Assembly (NCBI GenBank): GCA_965112735.1
Contig: OZ218959.1
Coordinates: forward strand, 434,001-498,000
Reading direction: 5' to 3'
Source of the DNA: Phaeosaccion multiseriatum
Taxonomy: Eukaryota; Protista; Ochrophyta, other classes
DNA length: 64,000 nt
Positions 1-44,648 of this stretch are shown here, in pieces. Both the position numbers and the translations under genes were made by a program. Each line of letters begins with the position of its first letter. Positions within the stretch are counted from its first letter, which is position 1. Under the pieces are notes generated by a model. The model was not told the origin of the DNA. It did not search any database and was given only the letters and a program-made list of their open reading frames with translations.

Positions 1-2199
<2,199 letters not shown>

Positions 2200-6250: not shown

Positions 6251-9200
6251 ATGTTTCATCTGAGGCAGTGTGCCAGTAAAAGTAATGGCAGAGCCTTCGA
6301 GGGAGTGGCAAGAGCGGCAATGGGGCGACGGTCTTCCGAACCACAACGCCGCGGCAAGTCTTCGAGCACCCAGGGGTCTTGTACGAGCCGCTTGCGAAGT
6401 ACAATGACCAAAATGGTCTGCACTCTTGGTAGGTGCACTTCTGCTCCTCTGCTCCTCCTTAAGATATTGTCGCTCATCCCCCTCCCTCCTCCCCCGTTTC
6501 ACCCCCCCCTCCCCCCCGTCTTTCGTCCTCCGTTTGCACTCGCAGGCCCGGCGTCGCTCCCTCCCGACAACCCAGACGGTCTCCAGAAGCTTGTGGAGGA
6601 AGGCATGGGGGTGGCAAGGTTTAACTTCAGCCACGTGGCAGGCAACTACCCGCCCATCACGGAGGTAGGTCTATCCATCCAAGGACGGGGAGGAGGTGAC
6701 CGAAGACCTCCTCCCCATAGCTTCTTCATGTTCCCTACGGTAGTGCGATAGGGGAGACGACTCTCCTCCCCATTTGTGTGCCAGCTGGAGCGGCTGCCAT
6801 AGCTGTACCAGACAAGGCCCATGTTAATTTTGACTAAGTTATTTTGACTGTCACCCGTGTTGTCCAGCACCCTGTGTGGAGTAGTAAGTAGTAACTATTT
6901 AGCTGTACAGCCTCAAAGCCCAATCGGACAGCAGCCTCCACTCCTGTAGAGGCAGAGGAGACAGCTACCCTAACCTGGCTGCCTCACTGCTGCTCTGTAC
7001 CACCACCCTCTCCATCCCGTCCGCTGCCATCCCCCAGGCGCTCAAGGCTCTGCGCAGTGCCAAAGGCCTGCACCACGACCTCTGCAGCCTCCCTGCCTCT
7101 GGCGAGATCAAGCCCGCCAACGTCCGAGCAGCCCTGCTTGACACCAAGGGCCCAGAGGTAAGGCACTCTCACAAGCATGGGGGAGGGAAAGGACGGGATG
7201 GCAGTGGATGTAGCGGGGGGCGGGGGGGAGGGAAAACCGAGGCGGAGATAGAGGCGAGATGGAGGTGATGCAAGGAGGGGAAGCAGCTGGGCGGTGGGCG
7301 TGAGTCGACTCCAGCCGCACATGTGCTGGCGACTGCATGGGGCGGCAGGAGGAGGAGGAGGTGGTCGGGGGGAGTTGGACGATCCTCACCCTTCGCCACA
7401 CCCCGCCCCCGCCCCCTATCCCCTTTCCCCTGCCCCTGCCCTTGCTCCTGTCCTCTACCTCGGCGCCACCTAATCAGATCCGTACGGGCATCCTCGCCGA
7501 CGGACTGAAGAAGATCACGTTGGAGAAGGGCACCGAGGTGGTGCTCAGCACGGACCTTGCCCATGAGGAGCTCACAACCCCACAGGTGGGTGCGTGCGTA
7601 CGTGCGTGCGTGCGTGGGGGCCGGGCAGAGCACATGGGGGGGCGGGGTGGTCCTTACCTGTTTCCTCGCTCCTCCTCCCTCCACCTCTTCGCTCCTTGCT
7701 CCTCCCCTCCCCCTCCTCCTCCTCACCCCCCCGGCTCTCCTCCCCACCCCCCCCCTCTCCTCCACCCCCCTTCCCAAATCTCCCCTTCTCCTTCCTCCCC
7801 CCCCATCCACTGCCATCCCCCGCCCCCTCCACAGCTCATCTTCGTAGACTACGCCGCCCTGGGCAGCACCGTCTCCCCCGGGGGCATGGTGCTCCTCGAT
7901 GACGGTCTAGTGGAGCTTGAAGTGCTCGAAGTGAGTAACGCCACCTCGGTGCGGTGTTTGGTGCGCAACACTGGCAGCCTGCAGAGTCGAAAGGGTGTGA
8001 ATCTGCCGGGCTGCTCGCTGCAGCTGCCTGCCATGACCGAGCAAGACAAGCTCGATCTCAAGTTTGGGGTAGAGGCTGGGTTCGACTTTGTCGCGGCGTC
8101 GTTTGTGCGAAAGGCCTCCGACGTACGCGCGGTGCAAGCCTATCTCGAGCGCTGCTGCGAGGCGATGGCCCGGGAGAATGGAGACTATGAGGGGCCTCAC
8201 AATGTTAAGAAGAGGCCCCTTGTCATAAGCAAGATTGAGAACTCGGAGGGCGTGGATAACTTTGATGAGATTCTGGAGGCCTCCGAAGGCATCATGGTTG
8301 CGAGGGGAGACTTGGGAGTGGAGATTCCCTTCCAGCAGGTCCTCATGCTGCAGAAAGAGCTGGTGCGGAAGTGCAACTTGGCGGGAAAGGTACGGGTGTC
8401 GGCATACGGTATGGCACCGCATGCGGTTACGAACACGCGCGGTCAGAGCCGAAGCGCAGGGCAAAAGTGCAAGGTGGAGGCGAAGTAGGCGTGATAACCA
8501 GAGCAAGAGAGAGAGGCGTGATGACCAGAGCAAGAGAGAGGGACGCAGTCAGATATAGAGGCAAAGGCAAGGCAAGGCAAGGCGCTCCCTTTGGATCGAC
8601 GTACGCACTCGGTAATCCTCCCTCCCTCCCTTCCCCCGCTCAGCCTGTCATTGTGGCGACTCAGATGCTGGACAGCATGATGACGCGTCCGCGTCCCACC
8701 CGCGCCGAGGTCACAGATGTCGGTAACGCCGTACTCGACGGAGCCGACGCGGTCATGCTCTCTGGTGAAACGGCCAATGGACTGTACAGCACACACGCGG
8801 CCAACACCATGATCACCATCTGTCACGAGGCCGACAGAGAACTCGATCGCAGTGCCGAGAGGGGAGGGACGCTTAAACGGACAGTGGAGGAGTTGGCGAG
8901 TTCAGATGTCGAGGTCATGGCCTCTTCGGCTGTCAAGGTGGGTGGGAGTAGGACAGTGGGTGGGTGGAAGGGGTAGGTGGGTGGAAGGGGTAGGTGGAAG
9001 GGGTAGGTGGAAGGGGTAGGTGGATGGGTTGGGTGGGTGGACGCGCAGACCGAGAGCCTAAACTTAAACTAGGCAGTCACTCAGCCACTCTCTCTCTGTG
9101 TGTGTCTCTCTCACCCCCCCCCTTGCTCTATCTCTCTACACACTATGCGGCCTCTCTGCCTGCCCCATGTGCCTGCCCATATGCCTGCCCGATGTGCCTG

Positions 9201-11301: not shown

Positions 11302-13338
11302 ATGATGGTGATGAGAGCAACATCGTTGAGGCGGGTGGCCAGAGCGTGCTACTCCTCTTTCATCGGCAGGAACAGAAGAGGACCCGCAGCAGTCGGAGGC
11401 ACCGCCGCTGAACGGCGTGCCGACTCTACTCTCTATCAGCAGAAGCAGCTGCTGCAGCAATGGTCCTGCTACTCTACTAGGGGAGATGAGAAGTCGAGGC
11501 AGATACGGCTCATGAGGGAGATTCAAGATCTGGGGAGGAGCAGGGATTGGAAAAGGGTGGCACCTACTCTGGAGCGCGCACGGCAAGAGGGCCTCAAGCC
11601 CGATGTGTACTGTATGAGTGCTGCTATTACAGCGATTGGGAAGTGCGGGCGGTGGAAGGGCGCCTTGGCTCTCTTGGCAGAAATGAAAGCAGAAGGACTC
11701 GCTCCGAATGAAATCAGCTATAGCGCCGCCATTAATGCATGCGCCAGGGCCAGCCAACATGTGCAGGCAATGGGTTTACTGAGGGAGATGAAGGCACAAG
11801 GACTCGCTCCCGATATAATCAGCTACAGCGCCGCCATTAATGCATGCGCCAGAGCCAGCCAACATGTGGAGGCAATGGGTTTACTGAGGGAGATGAAGGC
11901 ACAAGGGCTTACTCCCAATGAATTCAGCTACAGTGCCACGATTAATGCATGCGCCAGGGCCAGCCAACATGTAGAGGCAAAGGGTTTACTGAGGGAGATG
12001 AAGGCTGAAGGACTCCCTCCGGATGAGATCAGCTACAGTGCCACCATCAATGCATGCGCCAGGGCCAGCCAATATGCAGAGGCAATGGGTTTACTGAGGG
12101 AGATGAAGGCACAAGGACTCGCTCCGGATGTAATCAGCTACAGTGCCACCATTAATGCATGCGCCAGGGCCGGCCAAGATGCGGAGGCAATGAATTTACT
12201 GAGGGAGATGAAGGCACAAGGACTCGCTCCAGATGAAATCAGCTACAACGCCACCATCAATGCATGCGCCAGGGCCAGCCAACATGTGGAGGCAATGGGT
12301 TTACTGAGGGAGATGAAGGCACAAGGACTCGCTCCGGATGAAATCAGCTACAGTGCCACCATTAATGCATGCGCCAGGGCCGGCCAAGATGCGGAGGCAA
12401 TGAATTTACTGAGGGAGATGAAGGCAAAAGGACTCGCTCCCCATGAAATCAGCTACAGTGCCACCATCAATGCATGCGCCAGGGCCGGCCAACATGTGGA
12501 GGCAATGAGTTTACTGAGGGAGATGAAGGCAGAAGGACTCGCTCCCGATGAAATCAGCTACAGTGCCACCATTAATGCATGCGCCAGTGCCAGCCAACAT
12601 GTGGAGGCAATGGGTTTACTGAGGGAGATGAAGGCAGAAGGACTCGCTCCCAATGAAATCAGCTACAATACCACCATTAATGCATGCGCCAGGGCCGCCC
12701 AACATGTGGAGGCAATGGGTTTACTGAGGGAGATGAAGGCACAACGACTTGCTCCCAATGAAATCAGCTACAATGCCACCATTAATGCATGCGCCAGGGC
12801 TGGGCAACATGTGGAGGCAATGGGTTTACTGAGGGAGATGAAAGCAGAACGACTCGCTCCGGATGTAATCAGCTACAATGCCACCATTAATGCATGCGCC
12901 AGGACCAGCCAACATGTGGAGGCAATGGGTTTACTGAGGGAGATGAAGGCACAAGGACTCGCTCCGGATGAAATCAGCTACAATGCCACCATTGATGCTC
13001 TGCAGGAGGATGGTGACGAGGAGGCTGCTGACGAGCTGTACGCAGAGGCCGTATCGCAAGGGGTCTTGAATCACTGGAAGGAAGGGGGGCAGGAGGTGGA
13101 CTTGCACGACTTCACCAGGGCAATGAGCAAGGCAGCCCTTCGTCACGTGCTCTCAGTGGAGAAGGTGGAGGGAGAGATCAAAGTCATCACAGGCCGAGGC
13201 CGAGGCAGTGAGGACGGCGTCAGCGTTCTCAAGCCCGCGGTGCTGGCCTACTTGCAGGAGAGGCCGGGTATCGAAGTATGGGAAGACGAGCACAACCCGG
13301 GGAGGGTGGTGATGCGGGTCGGTGGAGGAGGGCAGTAA
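11302..13338 (+). CDS. PPR-SMR protein, copy 1 (678 aa, intronless, probable organellar presequence)
   Basis: Arg/Ser-rich N-terminus lacking acidic residues over the first ~35 aa. 12 near-identical 35-aa P-type PPR motifs (EISYSATINACARASQHVEAMGLLREMKAQGLAPD) plus degenerate flanking motifs. C-terminal SMR domain with VDLHD, VITGRG and NPG motifs. Confidence 0.95.
   Translation: MMVMRATSLRRVARACYSSFIGRNRRGPAAVGGTAAERRADSTLYQQKQLLQQWSCYSTRGDEKSRQIRLMREIQDLGRSRDWKRVAPTLERARQEGLKPDVYCMSAAITAIGKCGRWKGALALLAEMKAEGLAPNEISYSAAINACARASQHVQAMGLLREMKAQGLAPDIISYSAAINACARASQHVEAMGLLREMKAQGLTPNEFSYSATINACARASQHVEAKGLLREMKAEGLPPDEISYSATINACARASQYAEAMGLLREMKAQGLAPDVISYSATINACARAGQDAEAMNLLREMKAQGLAPDEISYNATINACARASQHVEAMGLLREMKAQGLAPDEISYSATINACARAGQDAEAMNLLREMKAKGLAPHEISYSATINACARAGQHVEAMSLLREMKAEGLAPDEISYSATINACASASQHVEAMGLLREMKAEGLAPNEISYNTTINACARAAQHVEAMGLLREMKAQRLAPNEISYNATINACARAGQHVEAMGLLREMKAERLAPDVISYNATINACARTSQHVEAMGLLREMKAQGLAPDEISYNATIDALQEDGDEEAADELYAEAVSQGVLNHWKEGGQEVDLHDFTRAMSKAALRHVLSVEKVEGEIKVITGRGRGSEDGVSVLKPAVLAYLQERPGIEVWEDEHNPGRVVMRVGGGGQ
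11710..12995 (+). repeat. 105-bp coding tandem repeat array (PPR), 12 full units
   Basis: Recurrent atcagctaca-tgccaccattaatgcatgcgccagggcc...gtttactgagggagatgaaggc with an exact 105-nt period. Confidence 0.95.
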
Positions 13339-13908
13339 GGGATGGAATCCTGGCTTGCTTTGGCTCGCCTTTCTTTCAATCCACCTCTTTCTTGTAATTA
13401 AGTAAATTGATTTGGTGTCCCATCAATCACGACTTACTCACGCACTCCGTTCCTCACGCACTCGTCCTCCTCCCCCCACATACGTAGTTCTTAGGTGATT
13501 TCTTTATGTCAATGAATGTCCCGCACGCACTCAGCAGAAGGAGGGGCTTCACTCCTCGCAGGTGTGTTGTGCGCTTCCAGCACAAGGCGCTTGGCGGTGG
13601 CCTGGCCCTCACAAATGGCAGTGGCCTGGCCCTCACAGATCACTCACTCTAATCGAGCGAGGTCCTTGTGCACAAGACTATGGGATTATGGCGGGTGGAG
13701 TTGTAGAGCGAGAGAGCATGCATCACGCGTTGGTACTCCACCCAAATCCACCAGCCAGTGGTCTCGTCCGTTTTATACAAGAATTGCATTTGATGCGGGG
13801 TCTGAGAGAGGCAGATCGTTTATCATGTGTTGGTCCTCCGCACAAGCTCACAGCTGGATGCAACAACGAGCAGAGGGACTCGAGAGCATTAAGAGCACCG
13901 GAGAGACA

Positions 13909-15816
13909 ATGCTGGTGATGAGAGGAACATCGTTGAGGCGGGTGGCCAGAGCGTGCTACTCCTCTTTCATTGGCAGGAACAGAAGAGGACCCGCAGCAGT
14001 GAAATCCCTCTCTCTCTCCCAGCAGAAGCAGCTGCTGCAGCAATGGTCCTGCTACTCTACTAGGGGAGATGAGAAGTCGAGGCAGATACGGCTCATGAGG
14101 GAGATTCAAGATCTGGGGAGGAACAGGGATTGGAAAAGGGTGGCACGTACTCTGGAGCGCGCACGGCAAGAGGGCCTCAAGCCCAATGTGTACTGTATGA
14201 GCGCTGCTATTACAGCGATTGGGAAGTGCGGGCGGTGGAAGGGCGCCTTGGCTCTCTTGGCAGAGATGAGGGAGGAAGGCGTCAGGCCAAACGTGGTCAG
14301 CTACAGCGCCACCATCAATGCATGCGCCAGGGCCAGCCAACATGTGGAGGCAATGTGTTTACTGAGGGAGATGAAGGCAGAAGGACTCGCTCCGAATGAA
14401 ATCAGCTACAGCGCCACCATTAATGCATGCGCCAGGGCCAGCCAACATGTAGAGGCAATGGGTTTACTGAGGGAGATGAAGGCACAAGGACTCCCTCCGG
14501 ATGTAATCAGCTACAGTGCCACGATTAATGCATGCGCCAGGGCCAGCCAATATGCAGAGGCAATATGTTTACTGAGGGAGATGAAGGCAGAAGGGCTCGC
14601 TCCCAATGAAATCAGCTACAGCGCCACCATCAATGCATGCGCCAGGGCCAGCCAACATGTGGAGGCAATGTGTTTACTGAGGGAGATGAAGGCAGAAGGA
14701 CTCGCTCCGAATGAAATCAGCTACAGCGCCACCATTAATGCATGCGCCAGGGCCAGCCAACATGTAGAGGCAATGGGTTTACTGAGGGAGATGAAGGCAC
14801 AAGGACTCGCTCCGGATGAAATCAGCTACAATGCCACCATTAATGCATGCGCCAGGGCCAGGCAACATGTGAAGGCAATGGGTTTACTGAGGGAGATGAA
14901 AGCAGAAGGACTCGCTCCGGATGTAATCAGCTACAGTGCCACCATTAATGCATGCGCCAAAGCCAACCAACACGCGGAGGCAATGAATTTACTGAGGGAG
15001 ATGAAGGCGGAAGGGCTCGCTCCCGATGAAATCAGCTACAGCTCCACCATTAATGCATGCGCCAGGGCCGGCCAAGATGCGGAGGCAATGAATTTACTGA
15101 GGGAGATGAAGGCACAAGGACTCGCTCCGGATGAAATCAGCTACAACGCCACCATCAATGCATGCGCCAGGGCCAGCCAACATGTAGAGGCAATGGGTTT
15201 ACTGAGGGAGATGAAGGCACAACGACTTGCTCCCGATGAAATCAGCTACAATGCCACCATTAATGCATGCGCCAGGGCTGGGCAACATGTGGAGGCAATG
15301 GGTTTACTGAGGGAGATGAAGGCTGAAGGACTTGTTCTGGATGAAATCAGCTACAGTGCCACTATTAATGCATGCACCAGGGCTGGCCAACACATGGAGG
15401 CAAAGGTTTTACTGAGGGAGATGAAGGCACAAGGACTCCCTCCGGATGAAATCAGCTACAGTGCCACGATTGATGCTCTGCAGGAGGGTGGTGACGAGGA
15501 GGCTGCTGACGAGCTGTACGCAGAGGCCGTATCGCAAGGGGTCTTCAATCACTGGAAGGAAGGGGGGCAGGAGGTGGACTTGCACGACTTCACCAGGGGA
15601 ACGAGCAAGGCAGCGCTTCGTCACGTGCTCTCAGTGGAGAAGGTGGAGGGAGAGATCAAAGTCATCACAGGCCGAGGCCGAGGCAGTGAGGACGGCGTCA
15701 GCGTTCTCAAGCCCGCGGTGCTGGCCTACTTGCAGGAGAGGCCGGGCATCGAAGTATGGGAAGACGAACACAACCCGGGGAGGGTGGTGATGCGGGTCGG
15801 TGGAGGAGGGCAGTAA
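13909..15816 (+). CDS. PPR-SMR protein, copy 2 (635 aa from ATG 13909, intronless)
   Basis: Paralog of 11302-13338 with near-identical N-terminus, SMR domain and proximal 3' flank, and 11 homogeneous PPR units. Start chosen by homology (MLVMRGTSLRR vs MMVMRATSLRR); the ORF is open upstream to 13516. Confidence 0.93.
   Translation: MLVMRGTSLRRVARACYSSFIGRNRRGPAAVKSLSLSQQKQLLQQWSCYSTRGDEKSRQIRLMREIQDLGRNRDWKRVARTLERARQEGLKPNVYCMSAAITAIGKCGRWKGALALLAEMREEGVRPNVVSYSATINACARASQHVEAMCLLREMKAEGLAPNEISYSATINACARASQHVEAMGLLREMKAQGLPPDVISYSATINACARASQYAEAICLLREMKAEGLAPNEISYSATINACARASQHVEAMCLLREMKAEGLAPNEISYSATINACARASQHVEAMGLLREMKAQGLAPDEISYNATINACARARQHVKAMGLLREMKAEGLAPDVISYSATINACAKANQHAEAMNLLREMKAEGLAPDEISYSSTINACARAGQDAEAMNLLREMKAQGLAPDEISYNATINACARASQHVEAMGLLREMKAQRLAPDEISYNATINACARAGQHVEAMGLLREMKAEGLVLDEISYSATINACTRAGQHMEAKVLLREMKAQGLPPDEISYSATIDALQEGGDEEAADELYAEAVSQGVFNHWKEGGQEVDLHDFTRGTSKAALRHVLSVEKVEGEIKVITGRGRGSEDGVSVLKPAVLAYLQERPGIEVWEDEHNPGRVVMRVGGGGQ
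14293..15473 (+). repeat. 105-bp coding tandem repeat array (PPR), 11 full units
   Basis: Same unit as copy 1, one unit fewer, variants in a different order. Confidence 0.95.
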
Positions 15817-16174
15817 GGGATGGAATCCTGGCTTGCTTTGGCTCGCCTTTCTTTCAATTAATTTCGTTCTTGCCTCACGCACTCGTCCCCCCCCTGTTGG
15901 GTCCCTTGACTTATGGTTTTTTTTTTTTTCGACGGTTGATCATTTCCAGCATTTTGGCTCCTGACGGAAAGCCAAGCAGGGAGTAGAATAAAGAGAGGTT
16001 GGGAAATAGAAAGGACTAGATCCTCTACTCTTTCAGCAGGAAGTGTCGTCCTTGAAACAAGGTGCCGAACTCTTTTAATCTACAGCGGCAGAAAGCAAGT
16101 GGAGAGAGGGAAGCCCCTTTAAAATTGCTTGCCTGCTACTGCCTGCTGTTGTTGCTGCTGCTGCTGCTATCGAC

Positions 16175-22072: not shown

Positions 22073-22204
22073 GGGGGCTGTGTGATATACCCTATACACG
22101 ACGGGGGGGCTGTGTGATATACCCTATACACGACGGGGGGGCTGTGTGATATACCCTATACACGACGGGGGGGCTGTGTGATATACCCTATACACGACGG
22201 GGGG
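22073..22204. repeat. 32-bp minisatellite x4 (gctgtgtgatataccctatacacgacgggggg)
   Basis: Units start at 22077, 22109, 22141 and 22173; no spacers. Confidence 0.95.
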
Positions 22205-23335: not shown

Positions 23336-23447
23336 CCCTTCGACGCAGAATATCGACCTACTCGATACCGGACCCTTCGACGCAGAATATCGACCTACTC
23401 GATACCGGACCCTTCGACGCAGAATATCGACCTACTCGATACCGGAC
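23336..23447. repeat. 37-bp minisatellite x3 with internal palindrome TATCGA-N5-TCGATA
   Basis: cccttcgacgcagaatatcgacctactcgataccgga repeated exactly three times, directly abutting. Confidence 0.95.
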
Positions 23448-23512: not shown

Positions 23513-26500
23513 TCAGTCGGTGAGCTTCTCGTGCACAAATACGGTGGTGGTTGCCGAGTCGCCACCCCAGGAGGTGCGCATTTCCTCCTTGGCCAGTAGG
23601 CCCCACTTGTCCTCCGTTACGGCCTTGGCGCTCACAGATAGACACAGACTGCCAACCTGTATAGGAGGAGGTCGTCCAAACAACAACAACAACAACAACA
23701 ACAACAGCAGTAAGCCATCAATCCTGAAAGGCACTAGTGATTTGTTTTCATCGAACAACTGACGAGACGCGACAGAGAGATACAACAGAGACAAATCGAC
23801 ACCGACATCCCACATTGACATCCATCACATGCTCCTAACTGAGATCAACTTATTCCTCTTCTTATGTACCCTTATGTACCCTTATGTACCCTTATGTACC
23901 TTCATGGTGTCGGCGAGGGTGAGGAGCTCTCGGCGCTGAGCGGGGTCGAAGTTGGCGTGCACGAAGATGCAGGACGCATCGTCCGGCCACGACTGCTGCA
24001 GGGCGTCTGTGTTGGAGGCACATGGGGACATTTGGAGGTACATGGGGGAGAGTATTGGTTGGTTGGAGGTGTATGGGGGGGGGGGGGAAGTTGGAGGGAG
24101 GCACCTGTGAATGGAGGCGACAGTTTGGAGAGAGGTGTATGAGGCAGAGGGTTGTTGGGGGAAAGGCATATGGGAAGGGGGATGGTGTGGGGGGGAGGGC
24201 AGATGGAGGCATATGGGAAGAGGGTCGCCTGACCTCCTAGGATGAAGTCCGTCCGCTTGGCCACAGGCGTCTGCACTGTCGCCATCAGCTCACGGGTGCA
24301 TCTGAAGAGAAAGGGAGAGAGGGCGTGTGGGTGCGTGAGTGGGTGCGTGAGTGGGTGCGTGAGTGGGTACGTGAGTGGAGAGGGCATGGTGGGCTGATGT
24401 GAGGGCTGAGCTTAGCCACGAGGCGGATCGAGATCCGATAGCCCCTGCGTCAAGTGTGTTCGGAGGATGCGAGCACGAGAGGGCGAGAGGCGCCTCCCCT
24501 CCTCCTCCCTCCGCTCCCCTTCCCTTCCCTTCCCTCCCCTCCCCTCCCCTCCCCTCCGCTCCCCTTCCCTCCCCTCCCCTCCCCTCCCCTCCCCTCCTCT
24601 TCCCTCCCCTCCGCTCCCCTTCCTTCCCCTCCGATCCCCTCCCCTCCACTCCACTCCGCTCCCCTCCCCTCCCCTCCCCTCCCCTCCCTTCCCCTCCCTT
24701 CCCCTCCCCTCCCCTCCCCTCCCCTCCCCTCCCCCTCCCCCACCCCTCTCTCACCTGTCCAACACGGGCCTGCTAACATCCCTGAGGTCCCTGAGTGCCT
24801 CCACCCCATAGGCTGCTTCAAAGTCGTGAAGCAGCGCCGCACATATCACCAACTTGCCTACCCCGGAGCCAAGGTCCCAGAAGTTCCCCCCGTTTTGAGA
24901 GAAATGGCCGTGCACCTTGCGAATCTGGCCATGAGTGGGCATGAGTGGGCATGAGTGGGTATGGGTGGGTATGAGTGGGCATGAGTGGGCATGAGTGGGT
25001 ATGAGTGGGCATGGGTGGGCATGAGTGGGTATGAGTGGGTATGGGTGGGTATGAGTGGGCATGAGTGGGTATGAGTGGGTATGAGTGGGCATGGGTGGGC
25101 ATGAGTGGGTATGGGTGGGTATGAGTGGGCATGAGTGGGCATGAGTGGGCATGAGTGGGCATGAGTGGGTATGAGTGGGCATGGGTGGGCATGAGTGGGT
25201 ATGAGTGGGTATGGGTGGGTATGAGTGGGCATGAGTGGGTATGAGTGGGTATGAGTGGGCATGGGTGGGCATGGGTGGGTATGAGTGGGCATGGGTGGGT
25301 ATGAGTGGGTATGAGTGGGTATGAGTGGGTATGAGTGGGCATGAGTGGGCATGAGTGGAGAGGGGAGGGGAGGAGGGGGGAAGGGGGCAGTGAGGGAGCG
25401 GCCGACTACAACATCTCGTAGTCCAGATAGGAAGGACAGAACACGAGGTGCTCCGTCCTGACACCTCACACATCAACTGGCGCTAATCCGACTGGCTCTA
25501 ATTCTGACACTCCGACTGAGAACCACCTCCAGCCCACATGAAGATGATTGTTTCTGCCCATACGACTGTTCCTGCCGGTTATGACTTGATCGCTTCTGCC
25601 CATATGAATGCCTCAGTGCCGCCTACCTTCAAGAAGAGCCACGCAAAGTCTTCCACCTCAAGCTCCCCATAAGCCAATGAGTCCTGCAGGAGCCCTTTCT
25701 GGCGTCTGTTCTCCTGACTCACAGCCTTGGCGTGCTCGGCGGGTAGGTCCTTGTACAGTTCCTTCACTCTCTCCACCACTTCATGAACCTGGAGGGGCAC
25801 GTCTTCGCCCTCCCTCAGGAGCGTGCCCACGAGCACGTGCAGGCGACGCATGTAAGAGAAGACCTCGTACTTGCTCAGCGCCTCGTAGGTGTACTGAGGG
25901 GGAGGGAGGGAGGGAGGGAGGGAGGGAGGGAGGGAGGGAGGGAGGGAGGGGGAGGGGATGGGATGGCAGCGGACGGAGGGACGGATGGAGGAACGCCAAG
26001 GGGGGGGGGTCAAAAGCGGCCCGTCTGCGTGTTTCTTTCCTTCCTATGTATGAGGGAACACCAAAGCATTCCAACAAGCGCAGCGCCGTGTATGTGTGTG
26101 TGGTGAAGCTGCTCGATCGATCGCCCCTTGTTCGTCCCGCACCTCAGGCTCGGCCGGCCCCTTGTTGCTCTTGAGCTGCGCGAGGAGCGCCAGCCTCTCC
26201 TCCTCCGCCAGTCGGGCATCCTCCTCTCTGTCGGCGATGTCCTCCTCGTCTTCCTCTTCTCCGTCGGTCGAGCCTTCCAGGTCATCGCTGCTCCCGACCA
26301 CGGGCGCCTTGTGGCCTTTACCCGTGCGACCCAGGGTGAAGGTCCCCATGAACTTTCGCCGCTTCCTTTCTCTCTCTTCTTCTTCTATCCTCAACCGCTC
26401 GGCTTCCGCCGCAACCTCCCTCTGTCTTTTCCGCTCCAAGCGCTCCAATCGCTTCTGTTCCGTCAGTTTGATCTCCTCCCGCCAAGCCTCGGGGATGCAT

Positions 26501-29010: not shown

Positions 29011-31338
29011 CACCCCTACCTGCGTGACGGTGAGCGTTTCGTACAAGTCACACAGGGTATCGAACTTCCACTCCTCCTTCTCCACCGCCACGAAGAACTG
29101 CTTGATGCCCTCCAAGGTCAGCTCATCTCGCTTGACGAGAATGCGCACAGGCTGATTCATGAACTTTCCCGTCATTTCCAGCACCTCCTCCGGCAACGTG
29201 GCAGAGATTAGCACCACTTGTGTTGACGGTGGCAGGTATCTGATTGGTGGAGAGAGGGGGGAGGACGGGTGTGGTGTGGGTGCGTGCGTGCGTGTGGGAG
29301 GGGCGGGGTGTTCATTGAGCGTCTAGTCAGCGGATGGCAGCAGAAAAGCAGCGGATGAGCTCATGTTTGGAATGTAACTGTGAGCCCTTGGATCCAACGG
29401 CTGTGCGTCCACTGAGCTTGAGCCTGAGCCTGAGCCTATCTCCCTCATGGAAAACTCCAGTTCCAGTTACAGTTCCGATTCCACTTCCGTTTCCAGACCT
29501 CACTCACTCTCCCCCTTAACCCCACGACATATACTCTCGAACGCTCTTGTCCCACCCACCCACCCATGTACCTGTAAATGTCGTAGATCTGCTCCTTGAA
29601 TCCCTTGTTGAGCATCTCATCCGCCTCGTCAATCACGAGCATCTTGAGCTTCTTGGTGCGCAGGTTCTTGCGGTTGATCATGTCAAACACCCTTCCTGGC
29701 GTGCCGGACACAACCTGGCAGCCGTAGTCCAGGCGGCGGATGTCCTCGCCGATGCTCTTGCCACCGATGCAGGCGTGGCATTGTACGTTCATGTAGTCAC
29801 CCAGAGCGAGGATCACCTGCACAACAAGGGCCCAGGGGAGGGTCGAGAAGGGCGAGAGGGGCAAGGTGGAGACAGCGAGAGGGGCGACATGGGCAAGGCA
29901 AAGAGAGAGCGACAGGAGCAAGGCAAGGCAAAACAAAGCAAGACACACACACACACACACGCAGAGAGAGAGAGAGAGAGCGGTAAGAATTACGACAGAA
30001 TTCCGTACGGGCGGAAGGGACTAGGGGGATGGCTCGAATCAGGACAGAGCAACGCAGTGTCATCGAAGTTAAGTAGCGTGGCTTGAGCCTGTGCTTGGTA
30101 GGGCAGGTCTATATAAGATGCCATCCGCCCTCGTAACTTCGGCACTGTCTGGTCGCCGCGCAAGTCCCATCCCGCGAGTACAAAAAAGCTTCCCGTTCTC
30201 CCTCACACCTCACGCCGCACCCACCCACCTTTTGCGTTTGCTCCGCGAGTTCCCTTGTGGGGGACAACACGAGGGCCTGTGTCTCGTTGGAGGTAGAGTC
30301 CAGTGCCTGCACCAGAGGAGGGGGAGCAAGTGATGACGTCAAGAGAAGATCCGGACAACACCGTAAGAGGAGCGCAGCTGACTACCAAAAGGCGAGGTTC
30401 GGAGTCGCGTTTGCTTCCCTGTCCCATGTTTAAGTCCAATCTAATACTTTCTGCGCTACCGTCCGTCAGCCTTCTCGAGACGCACTGGTGGGATTGCCGT
30501 GACTGCCGTGAGATAGGAAGCCAACTCATCAGACCTCTCTTTCTCTCTCTTCTTACAAATCTCCTCCCCCTTCCCTTCCGGCAACCCAACTCCCTCCCCC
30601 CAGTACCTGCAAGACCCCAATACTGAAGACGGCAGTCTTTCCTGTGCCCGACTGGCTCTGAGCAATGACGTCTCTGCCCGTCATGATGGGCTTGATGGCT
30701 CGCTGCTGCACCGCCGACGGCCGCTCAAAGCCGTAGGCGTACACGCCCCTCAGCAGGTCCTCCTTCAGCCCCATCTTATCGAACGACTCACACACCTCCA
30801 CCTCCCCCTGTGCATGGAAGCGGCAGAGCAGCAGCAGAGGTAGGAGGGGGGGGGGAGGCAACAGCGTCACCATCGCGTGGAGCAGCAAAGCAAGCAGTGT
30901 GTGATTTTTACTCTTTTCCCTCCCCTGACACCAGGATAAGGTTCCTTGACGACCGACGATGTCACACACACAAGAGGGAAGAGCCGCTCCTCAACTGTCC
31001 AGCGTGTCACACCAAGGGCCTGGCGAGGCCCATTTTCATCTCCCTTGACAGCCCGTCTCTTGGCTGGATCCTCCCTCGCCCTCAGTCCTTCCCAGCTCTG
31101 AGCAGCCGAGCGAGAACCCCACCTTCTCCCCACGTACCGCCAAAGTGAACTCGATCCCTTCCTCCTCATCGTAATCCACCCTCTCGCCCGCCTTTGCACG
31201 GCTTCGCCCAGCCTTGCTGGAGTAGCCGCCCCCTCCCGATGACCGCCCTCCTCCCCCATGCCTGCCCCCTCCTCCTCCGCCTCCTCCTTTGCTCACTACG
31301 CGACTACTGGCACCGCCTTCTCCCCGTCGAGACGCCAT
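28261..31338 (-). CDS. EIF4A3: DEAD-box RNA helicase eIF4A-III (exon junction complex core), 7 exons
   Basis: [153 protein letters not shown] and RSGRFG favour eIF4A-III over eIF4A-I. Confidence 0.96.
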
Positions 31339-34669: not shown

Positions 34670-35674
34670 CTAGCTCTTGTGTGTGTGGCACACATCCTTG
34701 ACGTCAAGCTGCAGAATGTCCGCCCTGCCCCCAAGCATCGACCCCACATTCGGCAATGTCCGACCAAAGTCTCCGTGCACAAACTCCTTCACGTACGTAC
34801 CCCCGGAGGTGGCCACCTTCGGAGAGGGAGGAGGGGCAGGCAGGCATATGGGACAAACAGATCGGTGAGTGAGCACTGACTGACACTTCAATTCAAGCTG
34901 GGCCGGGCACCCGGACGGGTATGGTAGCAAGTCTCAAAAGAGGAGGTGTTTGTGCTCTCTCTCAGGGTGGGGAGGTGGAGCGGGGTGGGAAAGGTGTGCG
35001 ACGCTACACATGCAAAGGGCCGCAGACGCAAGGGGGGGGGGGGGGGCGAAACTGAAACCGTTGGGGCGATGCGTCTCGCTTCACTTGTTCTGCCCACACA
35101 CACTTTCAGATTCCCCTAGGTGATTCCTATTAAGTCAATAAATCATCCCACTCCCCACCGAGCCGAGCCCTCAGTCACCCTGACATCTTTCGCCCTGAGG
35201 CAGAGGCCTGGCGTGGTGTGTTTATTGACTTACTCACCGTGAGGATGAAGTAGTGGTCGTTGAGCCACTGTACCTCCATGGAGTGGACGGTCTTGACACG
35301 AGTCAAGAGCGTCCGCCGATGCAGCACGCGGACCTGTCCTCCCAAGCACAAGAGTAGCGGTGCCGCACACGCAAACGGAGAGCGAGTGGGGTAGTGGGGT
35401 GAGTGGAGGGGCAGGGCAACATACAGGGTGGGATACACACTAGTGGAGCATTGGGACACACGGGAAGGAGTGAGCCCTTGTCGCACACGGAGGGACGGAA
35501 GTGGGGGAGAGAGGGAGAGAGGTAATGAGGAGAAGTAGCGGAAGGGGGAGAGAGGGAAGGAGGCAGTGAGGAGAAGCAGCTACGATGTTCGCTTGGAAGG
35601 GAAAGGCCACACAAAGACGAAAAGACGGAGCAGAGAGAAGAGAAGAGAGAGCGAGAGAGAGAGAGAAGAGATGT

Positions 35675-35733
<59 letters not shown>

Positions 35734-38700
35734 AGAGCGAGAGAGAGAGAAGAGATGTAGAGAGAGAGAGAGAGAGGAGAGAGAGCGAGAGAGAGAGAAG
35801 AGATGTAGAGAGAGAGAGAGGAGAGCGACACAGAGGGAAACTGAAACTGTGCGAGCTCAGCCCAGGCCTCACCGGAGTCTGCTGAAGCACCTCCATATCC
35901 TCTCCCTCCTTGCGCGAGAGAAGCGCCACCAGCTGAGCGGATGGAGGAAGGACGGACGGACGGACGGGAGAGTGAGACGCAGAGAAGGGCGAGTGAGAGG
36001 AACAGTGATGGAGCGTGTGCACGGGGAGGGCGACAAAGGGGGCGGGCGATACGCTCATTCACGAGCAAGTCAGCGGCCCCTGCCCGGGAAGTGAATCGCT
36101 CATTCACGTGCAACGTCTTTCTCCTCCACAGAAGGCCATCAGTTCGGCCGGTCTGTCTGTTGGTCCGTCGGTCGGTCCGTCCGTCGAGCCCCCTCCCCTC
36201 TTTCCCGCGCCGCCCGCCGCCTCCGCCTGCCGCTGCGGCTCACCTCCTTCTCTCCGTGTGCCTTCTCGCTCCAGCACAGGCACGTGTAGACCTTTCTCGT
36301 GTCCTCAGAGGCCCCCTGCACGGTCGCCACAGCCTCCCTGTTCGTCATCGCCATTTGTGACACTTGGACACACAAGCCTGCATTCCGCCCCGTGCCGGCA
36401 TTCACGGCATCCTGATGTGTGTGATGTGTGTGTGTGTGTGGGGGGGGGGGAGAAGGAACGACAGTGAGAAGGCATTGCTTTCTCCCTTCTTTCTCTATTC
36501 TTCAACGACAGTCTCCCGGGCATCCACCGCGCAGTTTCAGTGTCAGTTACTCCCGGGCCTACCCAAACCTCTGTGCCCTCTGCTGCCTTCTACTGCCTTC
36601 TGAGAGACGACCGACCGACCGACCAACCTGCAGGCTTGCCAGGGCGCTCTCCACCTTCTGCGCGGACCGCTTGCTGTCCACGAGCTTGAGCACGAAGGGC
36701 CGCCCGCCGCCCAGCATGCGGACGTCAATGTCTTCCCTGTGTTTATGTGTGTGTGTGTGTGTGTGTGTGCGTATGTGGATGAAGTGGGGAGATGGACGAG
36801 AACGTAAAAGGGCCGCCTCTCGGAAAGCGACGCTCAAGACGAAGCACAGCATGCAGACCCCTGGTCCACACGAAAAGGAGCGGCGAGAACGGGGTGCGAC
36901 GCAACATACAAGTACCCACCCACGCACCCACGCACCCACGCACCCACGCACCCACGCACACACGCACACACGCACCTCCCCGACCCGTGCATAGCGGCCT
37001 CCGCGCACCCCGAGAAGGCCTCGAAGGGCTCTGCGATCATCTCCTCCACTGACCACAAGCCCTTACGCGTCATACCCATCAACCACGGCGTCTGAGGCAC
37101 CTGCACAAGAGGGAGGAGGGGGGTGGAGGGGCTTTGGCTCCAGAGGGTAGGGGGGGGCGTCCACCTGGGATACGCGCCCACCTGTGATACGCGCCCACCT
37201 GGGATAAGCGCCTCGGCAGATCAAGGACAAAACCAAGGCGGCTCGGGAGGAGGTCGGGGCTCTACAACGCCCCCCTCCCCCACCTTCCATTCCATTCACA
37301 CCCACGAGACGGACAGACGCAACCCGCACCCCACGCACCTCCCGCGAGAGTTTGTTGTAGAAACCCTTCACCACCACGTGCTCTCTCTTCCAGCGCAGCT
37401 GCACCTGGCAGGCTGGTTCCTCCGTCTCGCCACCCTCGGCCTTCCAGCGCCGCACCATCCCGTGGAGGCGCTCCTCCTGCGCCGGGGTGAGCTCCGACAG
37501 GGCCTTGTTCACGACGGAGGTGTTCAAGTACCCGTCGTTGTCGCTGTCGTTCTTGCGCCTCTTGCGTTTCTGCGTGTTTGTGCGTGCGTGGTTTAGTTTG
37601 GTAGTCAATAAATCTCAGTAAGGGCGAAGGAAAGAGTTGCCCATTGGTGGCTCTGCACTCCTTGGTGGTTGGCTGCACACTATGGCTGCACTCTTTGGCT
37701 CCTCGCGTACCTGGAAGTAGTTCTCCTTCTCTCCTCTCTCCACTACCGAGCGAGGCGCGGGTCTGTTCCCCAGAAGGGGGGGGGGGGAGAGAGGGCGAGG
37801 AGGGCACGGACTCAGTGGAGCAAAAGCGTGGGTGATCCTCCCCGCCAATGAGAGAGAGGCATATGCTGCCATACCCTTACCTTGGCTTAATATCCAGCAT
37901 GACCGCCGCTCGGTTGTCTGCCTCGAAGTTCAGCATCTCTGCCTCTAGTAGGAGCTCCTCATCCCTTCGAAACTGGCGTGGGTCAAGTCAAGTCAGGCAG
38001 GTCAATCAGCAGAGCATTGCATGGGTCAAGGGCGGCAGATGGGGTGCGAGCAAAGGACTTCCCCCCTCCCCTCCCCCCTCCCCTCCTGCCTGTCACTCTT
38101 TTCCGCCTCGACACCTCTGCGCACCTGCACCCCCAGCCTTCGCGCCACCCCCCCCGTCATCCTCATCTTCACAGCCGACTTGAGGTCCACGATCTGCCCA
38201 GCGGGGACGAGTGGGGTGCGCGGCTCCTCCTCGCCCCCCGCGAAGCGCACAAAGGCCTCCTGCCGCACCGCCGCGCATAGCAACAACTTGACGCTGAAGC
38301 TGAAGTCGCCGAGGTCGTAGCCCCTGTCCACCACCTCCTGTGCGCCGTGCGCTTCCAAGGAGATGCAGCACTCTGCGGGAGACGCCTGTGGCTGCGGCTG
38401 TGGAGCGTCCACCTTGTCTTTCACGCCGCCGTCGCCCCCCCCTCTAGGTACTTCTATTGGCGCACTACTACTGCTACCACCTGCTACCACTGCTGCTGCT
38501 GCTCCTCCTCCTCCTCCTCCTCCTCCTCCTCCTCCTCCTGCCGCTCCTCCAGCTCCTCCAGCTCCTTCTCGGGATTGTTCGTGCTCTACTTTCGGCCCTA
38601 CTGTCGACTCTACCCCTCTCAGAACCACAGGCGTCGTGGTTTGCAGCAAGCCGAGGCACAAGGGACACACCCTCCTCCTCTTCCCGGCCTTCGTCTCTCG

Positions 38701-41073: not shown

Positions 41074-41333
41074 GCCTTGATCCTTGTGCTGCATTACCTT
41101 GGCCAGGTGAGGTGGGTGCAGGACTAGCTCAGTGGCGAGATCTTAATGGAGGGAGGGGAGGAGGAAAAAATAAAAAAGGAGAGAGAAAAACAAAAAAATA
41201 AAAATCATAGATGGCACTTAAAGGCAGAAAAGTACAAATACTCCCCGCCTCCTCCGACTTCCTCCGGGCAACCACAACTCGTCTTCCTCCACCACCCCCT
41301 TGCCTCCCCTCCTTCTCTTCTTTTCTGCTGCGA

Positions 41334-41879
41334 ATGCCTCGCGATATTGATATTCCTCGCTATGATGAGGCCAAGTCTGATCTGCAGAGGCGCCACATTA
41401 TAGATACCGTAATTCATGAAGCTGGAGGATTGGGAGACACCGCTACGCTGGATTTACTCATAGACGGCGGGTGGTAAGTCTCCCCCTTAACTAGCACCTC
41501 TTCTTGTCGTTCACTTATTGTCGCGCGCTTGCCTAGGCCGATGGAGAGAGCCCTTCAGTCAGCTTTAATGAAGAAATGCGTCAAAGGCGTCCGCCACCTA
41601 GTGGAGACTCGAGGACTATCCATGGAGAACTCTCCCGGCGCTCTTGATGCTTTCCTGAGTTCGGCCAACCACCACCGGCTCGAGGGATATTCGGCCCGGA
41701 ACAGAGACACAATTTGGCCAATAGTTTGCAGGAGGGGCAAGCTTCTCAGAGGTGTTCCCGACGCTGAGCTGAAGGCGTTGGAGGCTTCCCCTGTAGCATG
41801 CACGAGGGAGGAGGCGAGGAGGGAGAGAGGGCAGAGGATGAGGTTTCTGCTTGTGACAATGCGGCATGCGGCGCGGCGG

Positions 41880-41911
<32 letters not shown>

Positions 41912-41960
41912 AGAAGAACAGCCGCGGCAACAACAGCAACAGCACCACCAACACCACCAC

Positions 41961-41996
<36 letters not shown>

Positions 41997-43623
41997 CAAC
42001 AGCAGCAGCAGCAGCAAGAAGAACAACAACAACAGCAGCAGCAACGACAGCCACAACACCAGCAGCAGCATCACCACCACCACCAGCACCACCCCTCCCC
42101 GGAGGCTGGATCTGGAGCGACTCTCTCTGCTCGCTTGGACGCTGTGTGCGCACGATGCCCCGGACTGAAGGGCCCGCTCGACTCTGTCTCGCACGACTCG
42201 AGCTTGCTGGAGCTGAACCTGCGACTCGCGGAGGACAAGATTGAGAAGGTATGGCGGGGGTTGGGCAGGGGGGCAAAGAAGGGAAGGCAGCCCTCGGGCG
42301 AGCACCAGGCTCTTCAGTAACAGCAGGACAAGGTTTCCCGCCTTGCTACCCCAGTGGGCTGAGACTGACTGAAATCCTGCGTCTCGCTTTGCTGCATTGC
42401 CCCTTTCTCTGAGGCAGATGCAATCATTCACGGATGCGCAGTTTCGGGAGCATCTCCAGAAGTTGGGGGAGGCGGCGCCCAACACGGAGGAGAATGTCCG
42501 GGGCGCCATGGACATGCCTTTGCCCGGCAAGCTCAACTACGTGGTGTCCTACGAGATTCACCTTAGCATACTCTTGGCCGAAGACCAGAGGGAGTGTGCG
42601 GCATTGCAGCCCGGAGTGGCAGCCGTAGCTGGATCAGCCCCACCAGCAGCAGTCCGTATGGCACTCAATGGCAACGACAACGCCCCTCCCCTCACGAGGT
42701 CAGTAGACACCACCGTCACCGCGCCTCCTCCTACTACGGCTGCTGCTACTGGTACTGGTGGTGGTGCTGCTGCTGGTGGTACTACTGGTGCTGCTGCTGC
42801 CGGTGGTGTGTGTGAGGGTGGCCTTGGGGAGCAGGGAGGACAAAGGATGGGTGAGGAAGATGCGCAGGCGAGGGGCGGGGGGAGAGGAAGGCAGAGCGCT
42901 GGTCGCGCTGATAGCGTGGAGGAGCGAAGCGTGATTGCTGACAAGGGGGAGGCCATACAGCTGAGCGGTGAGGAGGAGGGTAGTCGCGGAGGAGAGAAGA
43001 GGAGGGACGGAGGGGGCGGAGTAAGTGGGCAGCCTGCCAAGAGGGCCCGAGGGGGGACCCTTGACTCTCCGCCACTGCCTCCGAGCACCCGTTCAGGTGC
43101 GATGGCATGTGCCGGTGGGGTGGTGACGGCTGCCGAGCTGAGCTCTGCGTTGGCAGTACAGAGACACGCCCTGGACACAGAGGAGAGGAGAGAGAAGTGG
43201 AACGACGAGGTGAACACCCAGATCTGCGACGTGCTTCAGTACCTGGCCAAGGTCAGCCCCATGCGCTACACCCAGGTGAGGCGGGTGCAGCACTGGCTCA
43301 ACGGCGAGATGGAGCGGCTGGGGCGCTTCATCGACAGCCCAAAGGGGTTTGTCGAGGCGACCTGCGGTAATGGCGGCGAGGCGGCATCAGGAGCAGCACC
43401 GGTGACAGCAAGAGCGGCGGCGGAGGAGATGCTGCAGGACCGTTTCAGCTTCGACGCCGCGGTGGAGCTCCTGCAGGCCTCGGGGAGAGTGAAGAGGAGT
43501 GTGTATGGGCAGCTGACGCGCGTGTGCCAGCACTTACACGCGACCCACCCCACGACGGGCGACTTGGCAGACAGCCCTTTCGTGGGGCAGATCGACGCCA
43601 TTCTGAAACGCCAGCAGGCTTAG
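41334..43623 (+). CDS. Ankyrin-like/polyQ protein of unknown function, copy A (3 exons)
   Basis: Exon 1 MPRDID...TVIHEAGGLGDTATLDLLIDGG, 63-nt GTAAGT..CTAG intron, exon 2 WPMERALQSALMKKCVKGVRHLVE...polyQ/H...DKIEK, GTATGG..CAG intron, exon 3 MQSFTD...LKRQQA*. The ankyrin assignment rests on pattern only. Confidence 0.75.
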
Positions 43624-43938
43624 CGAGGGGCGGAGCTGTGCAAGTGACTTAAAAGGGACTTGGGCGCACGAATCTTGGGTTTGCAAGTCTTGCTTCGACG
43701 CGATGAAGGGTTCCTCCTGCCGCCCATTCATGCGTATACTACCAACTTTTTTTTTTTTTTTTTTTTAAAAACAACGTTTAACAATCATAGATGGCACTTA
43801 AAGGCAGATAATTTCCTCCCCCACTTTCCTTTATAAGGCCCTTTTGGCCTCCTCCGACTTCCTCCAGGCAACCACAACTCGGTTTATCTTCCTCCACCCC
43901 CCCCTTGCCTCCCCTCCTTCTCTTCTTTTCTGCTGCGA

Positions 43939-44575: not shown

Positions 44576-44648
<73 letters not shown>

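What the first reader, a model, noticed from the sequence alone, without database searches (positions are those of the whole stretch)
11605..15473. PPR code residues toggle by single G/A transitions, and the two paralogs read different targets
Seen: position 5 is only Ser (always AGY codons) or Asn (AAY); position 35 is Asp (GAT) or Asn (AAT), once His (CAT). Each switch is one nucleotide. The 5/35 pairs are copy 1 = SN SD SN SD SD SD ND SH SD SN NN ND ND and copy 2 = SN SN SD SN SN SD ND SD SD ND ND SD. Applying the plant-derived code (SN=A, SD~G, ND=U, NN=U/C) predicts roughly 5'-AGAGGGUnGAYUU-3' and 5'-AAGAAGUGGUUG-3'. Inference: a two-bit, mutationally accessible specificity switch per repeat has already given the paralogs different specificities.
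Basis: partly seen in the sequence, partly recalled or inferred. Interest (0 to 1): 0.8.

Follow-up and report, generated by a model that had tools for sequence, protein, structure and literature searches.

The report
Tandem algal PPR-SMR genes, differing RNA codes
Two neighbouring genes of a stramenopile alga encode RNA-reading repeat (PPR) proteins with a small nuclease-type (Smr) tail. Their near-identical repeats differ at the two base-choosing residues, but just as often at about five other surface residues, and no RNA target, binding or expression is shown.

Summary
Ser is always AGY, Asn AAY, Asp GAT. The one slip is that Asn35 of copy 2 motif 1 is AAC, not AAT.

- **For it:** the four pairs used (SN, SD, ND, NN) are the experimentally validated codes for A, G, U and C/U. 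Each is one transition from the next. The predicted words are incompatible at 7 of 12 positions in every register.
- **Against it:**
  - Positions 5 and 35 are no more variable than positions 30, 22, 15 and 1.
  - The two arrays are not collinear (p 0.27 against shuffled order).
  - Synonymous divergence in the arrays is about 3.5 times that of the flanks. The difference therefore comes largely from reshuffled or converted repeat modules, not from switches flipped in place.
- **Not unusual:** the S/N plus D/N alphabet is common in algal relatives, and diversification at 5/35 with motif shuffling is already described for plant Rf-like PPRs.

The Smr tail has both motifs (VDLH, TGRG) and an Smr fold.

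This scan has already met the same multi-copy family many times on other DNA of this genome. I class it as a new variant of a known kind, of moderate interest.

The parts
11302..13338 (+). Copy 1: intact single-exon PPR-SMR gene, 678 aa
   Evidence: ORF. Pfam PPR_2 E 1.5e-123 with 13 stretches; Smr 24.2 bits, just under the 25.7 cut-off.
11302..11394 (+). N-terminal 31 residues of copy 1: mitochondrial-type presequence (inferred)
   Evidence: 7 R/K, 0 D/E, and no hydrophobic core longer than 4 residues, so it is not an ER signal peptide of the kind ochrophyte plastid import needs. No predictor was run.
11500..11604 (+). Degenerate PPR-like motif R0 of copy 1 (M5, D35)
   Evidence: In register with the array when read from the translation. 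Its last codon is GAT here and AAT in copy 2 (N-terminal difference 166).
11605..12969 (+). Copy 1 array: 13 PPR motifs of 105 nt. Motif 1 is divergent; motifs 2-13 are about 91% alike.
   Evidence: (TRF period 105, 91% matches).
12970..13074 (+). Copy 1 degenerate last PPR motif (N5)
   Evidence: This motif is conserved in the tail relatives.
13075..13338 (+). Copy 1 Smr domain with VDLH and TGRG motifs, plus the stop codon
   Evidence: Motif criteria from PMC6662315. D44, H46, G75 and G77 are conserved in alignment A2. AF2 pLDDT 87.6. Foldseek top hits are N4BP2 Smr, pTAC2/PAP2 and MutS2 Smr.
13339..13908 (.). Intergenic spacer. Only its first ~55 nt (shared 3' flank) resemble the DNA after copy 2.
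   Evidence: Contigs with no differences lie at 13438-13597 and 13690-13851.
13909..15816 (+). Copy 2: intact single-exon PPR-SMR gene, 635 aa. The open frame runs upstream to 13516 without homology to copy 1.
14188..15447 (+). Copy 2 array: 12 PPR motifs of 105 nt
15448..15816 (+). Copy 2 degenerate last PPR motif (S5) plus Smr domain (VDLH, TGRG) and stop codon

Best explanation
**What it is.** These are two adjacent, intact, intronless nuclear genes of an ochrophyte (stramenopile) alga. [quoted passage not shown] Each protein has a basic N-terminal presequence of mitochondrial type (inferred). It has one degenerate motif, then 13 or 12 canonical motifs built from a recently amplified 105-nt module, then one degenerate motif. 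It ends in an Smr domain with both signature motifs.

**How it most likely works (inferred).** The array binds single-stranded organellar RNA, one base per motif, through residues 5 and 35, as in solved designer PPRs. Here those residues use only the four pairs that specify A, G, U and C/U. The Smr tail may then cut, or otherwise act, next to the bound site, as in plant SOT1.

**The two paralogs.** Their predicted words are different and purine-rich.

**How the difference arose (partly shown).** It arose mainly by re-assortment, unequal exchange or gene conversion of module variants that already existed in the family. Single G/A transitions at codons 5 and 35 are one source of those variants. 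It did not arise by flipping switches in a fixed array.

**Where the variation sits.** It is tolerated or kept at about seven surface positions (1, 5, 15, 22, 30, 33, 35). The two code positions are members of that set, not outliers.
For: - **Domains:** Pfam PPR families at E 1e-116 to 1e-123. Gapless in-register alignment to dPPR-U8C2 and to PPR10.
- **Smr tail:** motifs VDLH and TGRG match the LDXH/TGXG criteria. The conserved columns D44, H46, G75 and G77 are present. AF2 pLDDT 87.6, with Smr and pTAC2 as top folds.
- **Code validity:** PMC6468296.
- **Predicted words:** incompatible at 7 of 12 positions.
- **Module history:** the repeat distance matrix is star-like. There is no collinearity (p 0.27), and array synonymous divergence is about 3.5 times that of the flanks (Fisher p 0.003).
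- **Multi-copy family:** 809 short contigs at 90-99% identity lie on a 1.3-kb stretch in one run, and up to 26 contigs carry an alternative letter at one site.
- **Constraint:** both 1.9-2.0 kb frames are intact, with dN/dS 0.43 in the arrays and about 0.4 in the flanks.
- **Lineage:** the pyruvate-kinase exon best matches diatoms, a pelagophyte and Triparma at 53-61%.
- **Presequence features:**
Against: - There is no evidence of expression. The runs are of unknown kind and only contigs were available.
- No organelle genome was available, so no target was tested.
- Localisation rests on composition alone.
- The plant-derived code has not been tested on this scaffold, and SH and MD/MN have no assigned base.
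- dN/dS across repeats is confounded, because position-matched repeats are not orthologous.
- The Pfam Smr score is just under the curated cut-off (24.2 against 25.7).
Confidence: 0.6

Rival explanations
1. One reading: positive selection acts on a per-repeat two-bit switch. Recurrent single G/A transitions at codons 5 and 35, in place, are the main way the paralogs gained different specificities.
For: - All code states are one transition apart.
- The code nucleotides take 10 of 111 differences between position-matched repeats (p 6e-5).
- Their diversity is about 3 times the 4-fold mean.
- nt103 has the lowest linkage to any other variable site (max r2 0.14).
- One clean isolated toggle exists: copy 1 motif 11 against copy 2 motif 10, with no other difference within 49 or 86 nt.
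- Gly, which is equally reachable by a transition at both codons, is never seen.
Against: - Positions 30, 22, 15 and 1 are as variable or more so.
- The arrays are not collinear, and their synonymous divergence is about 3.5 times that of the flanks. Most 'toggles' therefore compare non-orthologous modules.
- 5 of 9 code differences have another difference 1 nt away.
- The code strings differ no more and no less than shuffled strings.
Confidence: 0.2
2. Neutral or relaxed evolution. The family is a fast-expanding, partly decaying gene family. The variable positions are simply the unconstrained surface residues of a PPR fold, and the predicted words mean nothing.
For: - Seven surface positions vary about equally.
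- Code-site diversity equals that of the top synonymous sites.
- There is no expression or target evidence.
Against: - Both frames are intact over about 2 kb.
- dN/dS is about 0.4.
- Residues at 5 and 35 stay within code-competent states in 24 of 25 motifs.
- The Smr motifs are intact in both copies.
Confidence: 0.15
3. Mutational hot spots. Local sequence context, rather than selection, makes nt14/15 and nt102/103 change often; nt15-16 and nt102-103 are CpG in some variants.
For: - The two most variable of the 35 third-codon positions are nt15 and nt102, the direct neighbours of the code nucleotides. That is 1 in 595 by chance.
- Window CpG observed/expected is 0.65 against 0.92 for GpC.
- AAT follows C102 in 4 of 6 cases, and GAT follows it in 4 of 16.
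Against: - The association is not significant (p 0.14).
- nt14 is not in a CpG.
- The main change at nt102 is G/C, which is not a deamination product.
- A hot spot does not explain why only N (and one H) appear.
Confidence: 0.05

Closest known systems
Plant PPR-SMR proteins (SOT1/PPR53, pTAC2/PAP2, GUN1, SVR7; reviews PMC3858433, PMC6662315)
   Same: - P-class PPR array followed by a C-terminal Smr domain.
- xDxH and TGxG motifs are present.
- The modelled last PPR motif plus Smr superposes on pTAC2/PAP2 (8ras_G, TMq 0.73).
- PPR-SMRs are already reported in heterokonts.
   Different: - Plants have about 8 members, and dinoflagellates usually 1-5. Here the genes belong to a family with many copies.
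- The repeats are 77-82% identical to one another, against a median of 38% in relatives.
- The presequence is mitochondrial-type, not plastid-type.
- The best relatives of the tail are only 45% identical.
Restorer-of-fertility-like (RFL) PPR clusters of flowering plants (PMC5075784 and the work it cites)
   Same: - Clustered or tandem P-class PPR genes.
- High diversity at positions 5 and 35.
- Whole-motif insertion, deletion and transposition by recombination changes the predicted RNA word.
   Different: - RFLs have no nuclease domain.
- Their repeats are far less uniform.
- They are land-plant specific.
- Here 5 and 35 are not singled out above other surface positions, and no cytoplasmic conflict is known.
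Designer/consensus PPRs (dPPR, cPPR; 5i9g, 5i9f, 4ozs, 6een)
   Same: - Near-identical 35-residue motifs that differ mainly at code positions.
- Gapless in-register alignment (E 1e-94).
- The same four-pair logic: SN, SD or TD, ND, and NN or NS.
   Different: - This protein is natural, not engineered.
- Its scaffold consensus (EISYSATINACARASQHVEAMGLLREMKAQGLAPD) differs from the plant consensus.
- Five or more non-code positions also vary.
- It carries an Smr tail.
Semi-uniform 'ISACEKGGQW'-type PPRs of dinoflagellates and other algae (e.g. Noctiluca P0002, Polarella P0005)
   Same: - S/N at position 5 and D/N at position 35.
- Repeats are fairly alike (mean identity 0.58-0.59).
- They are the best full-length hits, at 39-43% identity.
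   Different: - They are less uniform.
- Most of them have no Smr hit on record.
- They come from a different lineage.

Membership tests
P-class PPR protein | Tandem 35-residue helix-turn-helix motifs that match the PPR profiles | tested here: met
   PF13041 E 1.5e-123 with 13 stretches, and 2e-116 with 12 stretches. All motifs are exactly 35 residues, with no L or S variants.
P-class PPR protein | Motif register that places residues 5 and 35 at the base-contacting positions of solved PPR-RNA complexes | tested here: met
   Gapless alignment to dPPR-U8C2 (5i9g) puts S/N5 on N5 and D/N35 on D35.
P-class PPR protein | Sequence-specific single-stranded RNA binding that follows the code | not testable with these tools
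   This needs EMSA or RIP. Only the published code was applied (PMC6468296).
PPR-SMR subfamily | C-terminal Smr fold | tested here: met
   - Pfam Smr E 3.7e-5, at 24.2 bits against a 25.7 cut-off.
- N4BP2 Smr E 0.002 by sequence.
- AF2 model with alignment A2 has pLDDT 87.6.
- Foldseek top hits are 2d9i, pTAC2 chains, 2vkc, 4och, 3qd7 and 2zqe.
- The nearest Atlas clusters are Smr.
PPR-SMR subfamily | LDXH (XaDXH) and TGXG motifs | tested here: met
   VDLH and TGRG are present in both copies. D44 and G75 are invariant, and H46 and G77 are at least 90% conserved, in 42 tails.
PPR-SMR subfamily | [quoted passage not shown] | not testable with these tools
   In plants it is shown only for SOT1.
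RFL-like diversifying PPR cluster | Excess variability specifically at code positions | tested here: inconclusive
   Positions 5 and 35 are in the top set but tie with 30, 22, 15 and 1. Only 23 repeats were available.
RFL-like diversifying PPR cluster | Motif-level recombination or reshuffling between clustered paralogs | tested here: met
   No collinearity (p 0.27). Synonymous differences are 32.5 per 226 sites in the arrays against 5 per 122 in the flanks (p 0.003). There is a 105-nt in-register indel.
RFL-like diversifying PPR cluster | A conflict partner, such as a mitochondrial CMS-like gene | not tested
   No organelle genome of this species was available.

The most novel reading that the evidence does not exclude
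A stramenopile alga keeps a large, fast-reshuffling family of natural 'designer-like' PPR-Smr proteins. They act as sequence-programmable organellar (probably mitochondrial) RNA endonucleases. New specificities arise by module exchange plus single transitions at codons 5 and 35. The family would be in conflict with, or broadly control, organellar or selfish RNAs. This would be an Rf-like arms race outside land plants, with the nuclease built in.
Probability: 0.15. Interest if true: 0.75.

Novelty: new variant of a known kind. Interest (0 to 1): 0.38.

Why it matters
If these proteins bind as the code predicts, the family would be a natural library of near-uniform PPR scaffolds with a nuclease tail. 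That would be useful as a non-plant scaffold for programmable RNA binders. It would also be a second, independent case of the Rf-like way of evolving new RNA specificities.

The specific claim of this finding, a two-bit transition switch, follows mostly from the genetic code and the known PPR code, combined with this module's use of AGY Ser codons. On the present data it is not the main route by which the two paralogs came to differ.

Tried and rejected
- **Exact-protein look-up of copy 1:** not on record.
- **Word search for full-length relatives:** nothing closer than 43% identity.
- **More family arrays from JGI metagenomes:** a 59-nt module pattern that hits all 23 repeats in the window found nothing. 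A tail-protein scan matched 541 stretches to a pattern, and none was confirmed as a relative.
- **Sequencing runs:** the holders are contigs only and of unknown kind, so expression, transcript ends and allelic variation could not be read. I laid only 12970-14292 and kept off the tandem arrays, because the tool turns away long repeats. Code positions inside the arrays were therefore not checked against reads.
- **Predicted words in the nuclear window:** chance level. One 1-mismatch hit at 31172-31184 against 0.62 expected, and none for the second word.
- **Single-sequence AF2 of the tail:** poor, pLDDT 55-64. It was replaced by the alignment-based model.
- **Position-by-position 'toggle' counting between the paralogs:** rejected as a measure of in-place switching once the arrays proved non-collinear.
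- **CpG hot-spot explanation for D/N:** suggestive, but not significant.
- **Formal site models (PAML or FUBAR):** not run. There are only 23 short recombining repeats and no valid tree.


Full report
**What is there.** The region holds two open frames on the + strand, 11302-13338 (678 aa) and 13516-15816. The second resembles the first only from the ATG at 13909, which gives 635 aa. DNA similarity between the two genes begins at the start codon and ends about 55 nt after the stop codon. The intergenic DNA does not align.

Both proteins match the Pfam PPR families at E 1e-116 to 1e-123, with 13 and 12 stretches. Both also match Smr at 24 bits, just under the curated cut-off.

The window is GC-rich, 55-65%. 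A pyruvate-kinase exon at 7337-8485 best matches diatoms, a pelagophyte and Triparma at 53-61% identity. The host is therefore an ochrophyte stramenopile with no close relative in the protein database. Full-length relatives of the PPR protein are at most 43% identical; they come from Noctiluca, Symbiodiniaceae, Polarella, brown algae and Nannochloropsis.

**Check of the observation.** I cut the arrays into 105-nt units from 11605 and 14188.
- Ser5 is always AGY, Asn5 is AAY, Asp35 is always GAT, and His35 occurs once as CAT.
- The only slip is Asn35 of copy 2 motif 1, which is AAC.
- The register is correct. The tract aligns without gaps to the RNA-bound designer protein dPPR-U8C2 (5i9g, E 1e-94), with residues 5 and 35 on the designer's N5 and D35.
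- Two further differences were missed. A degenerate motif before motif 1 ends in D (copy 1) or N (copy 2). The degenerate last motif has N5 (copy 1) or S5 (copy 2).

The base assignments SN=A, SD=G, ND=U and NN=C/U are supported by EMSA of 62 designer PPRs (PMC6468296). SH has no assigned base, and 'MD' bound nothing in that study.

**Are positions 5 and 35 special?** Among the 23 canonical repeats, residue entropy is:

| Position | 22 | 15 | 30 | 35 | 18 | 33 | 1 | 17 | 5 |
|---|---|---|---|---|---|---|---|---|---|
| Entropy | 1.65 | 1.58 | 1.21 | 1.07 | 1.07 | 1.05 | 1.00 | 0.97 | 0.89 |

- **Nucleotide level:** the two code nucleotides (nt103 and nt14) rank 6th and 7th of 105, with pi 0.47 and 0.44. 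The mean is 0.158 at 4-fold sites and 0.093 at 0-fold sites.
- **Between position-matched repeats of the two genes:** they take 10 of 111 differences (2.1 expected, p 6e-5), and positions 5 and 35 take 10 of 63 residue differences (p 0.003).
- **Unbiased nearest-neighbour test** (distance counted outside the tested codon): positions 30, 35, 5, 22 and 1 score 0.42, 0.41, 0.40, 0.39 and 0.33.

The code positions therefore belong to a set of about seven fast surface positions. They are not outliers within that set. What is particular to them is the restricted outcome: only code-competent residues appear. Gly is never seen, although it is equally reachable by a transition at both codons. nt103 is also the variable site least linked to any other (max r2 0.14).

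**How the paralogs came to differ.** The flanks are far more alike than the arrays.
- The flanks (N-terminal part and Smr) differ at 12 of 522 nt, with 5 synonymous differences per 122 sites.
- The position-matched canonical repeats show 32.5 synonymous differences per 226 sites (Fisher p 0.003).
- The repeat-by-repeat distance matrix is star-like.
- Position-matched pairs differ by 8.1-8.5 of 99 nt, against 8.95 for all pairs between the arrays.
- A repeat-level alignment is no better than with shuffled repeat order (p 0.27).
- The predicted words are incompatible at 7 of 12 positions in every register, the same as shuffled strings (mean 7.3).
- Five of nine code differences have another difference 1 nt away. 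One, copy 1 motif 11 against copy 2 motif 10, is a clean isolated G/A change.

The arrays are therefore two different draws from a pool of module variants, while the flanks were homogenised or duplicated more recently. This is what module exchange and gene conversion in a multi-copy family would give.

Read data support the multi-copy family. In one run, 809 short contigs at 90-99% identity lie on 12970-14292. Up to 26 contigs carry an alternative letter at a single site. Contigs with no differences lie on parts of the spacer (13438-13597 and 13690-13851). A related organism also holds pieces at 90-97% identity.

**The rest of the protein.** The first 31 residues have 7 R/K and no D/E, and no hydrophobic core. 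That fits a mitochondrial presequence and not the signal-peptide-led plastid import of ochrophytes. This is an inference; no predictor was run.

The tail has 170 relatives at E <= 1e-3 among 1.84 billion representatives, the best at 45% identity. An alignment of 42 tails shows a conserved last PPR motif, xDLH, ITGxG and NPGR. D44 and G75 are invariant. Both window proteins have VDLH and TGRG, the two motifs tied to DNA and RNA cleavage in SOT1 (PMC6662315; XaDXH/TGXG in PMC12787238).

The alignment-based AF2 model has pLDDT 87.6. Its best structural matches are N4BP2 Smr, the plant PPR-SMR pTAC2/PAP2 (TMq 0.66-0.73), MutS2 Smr and YdaL.

**Context.**
- In 64 algal relatives position 5 is N 59%, S 25% and T 6%. 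In land plants TD and TN outrank or bracket SD and SN. Ser instead of Thr as the purine-type residue is therefore a general algal habit.
- Within the module every Ser at positions 3, 5 and 15 is AGY (54 of 55), although the rest of the window prefers TCN. AGY at position 5 is thus the module's ancestral usage and not a special device, though it does make S/N a transition.
- Motif uniformity (mean pairwise identity 0.77-0.82) exceeds every relative retrieved (0.59 or less, median 0.38).
- PPR-SMRs are known in heterokonts (PMC3858433).
- High diversity at 5/35 together with motif insertion, deletion and transposition by recombination is described for plant Rf-like PPRs (PMC5075784).

**Verdict.** The genes are ordinary in kind (PPR-SMR). 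They are unusual in repeat uniformity and family size.

Their predicted RNA words differ. The difference is better explained by reshuffled modules than by switches flipped in place, and the code positions do not stand above several other surface positions. Expression, localisation, target and nuclease activity are all unshown.

Earlier notes of this scan describe the same family on many other pieces of this genome. Their claims were used as leads only. I checked the lineage, the multi-copy status, the reshuffling and the uniformity here. For these two genes I did not reproduce the claim that repeats differ 'mostly' at the code residues.

Noticed in passing
window 11605-15447, module nt15 and nt102: The two most variable of the 35 third-codon (mostly synonymous) positions are the direct neighbours of the two code nucleotides. 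Codon 5.3 has pi 0.50 and codon 34.3 has pi 0.55. That is 1 in 595 by chance, yet linkage to the code nucleotides is low (r2 0.02 and 0.14). Whether this is a hot spot or very short-range hitchhiking is open.
   Followed up: partly
window 11302 and 13909; 13339-13393 and 15817-15871: Similarity between the two genes starts at the ATG and ends about 55 nt after the stop codon. Upstream and intergenic DNA do not align, which is odd for a simple tandem duplication. It fits conversion limited to the transcribed or coding part, or separate insertion of the two copies.
   Followed up: partly
window 13516-13908: The open frame of copy 2 runs 131 codons upstream of the homologous ATG, with no similarity to copy 1. 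It is probably a chance extension, but the true start was not tested.
   Followed up: no
window 41282-46243: A second tandem duplication (units about 2.6 kb, 87-94% identical) carries two 408-aa ORFs at 42397-43623 and 45017-46243. Neither has a Pfam match.
   Followed up: no
window 22073-22204 and 23336-23447: Perfect (100%) tandem repeats of 32 nt x 4.1 and 37 nt x 3.0, about 1.1 kb apart.
   Followed up: no
window 7337-8485: An exon-sized ORF encodes the barrel domain of pyruvate kinase (PF00224, E 2e-64). It was used here only to place the organism among ochrophytes.
   Followed up: partly
whole window: CpG observed/expected is 0.65, against 0.92 for GpC. This moderate CpG depletion hints at cytosine methylation in this genome.
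   Followed up: no
window 581-874, 35632-35825, 56583-56928, 24926-25358: Long microsatellites: (CA)147, (AG)98 and (CT)176. There is also a 10-nt repeat with 43 copies.
   Followed up: no
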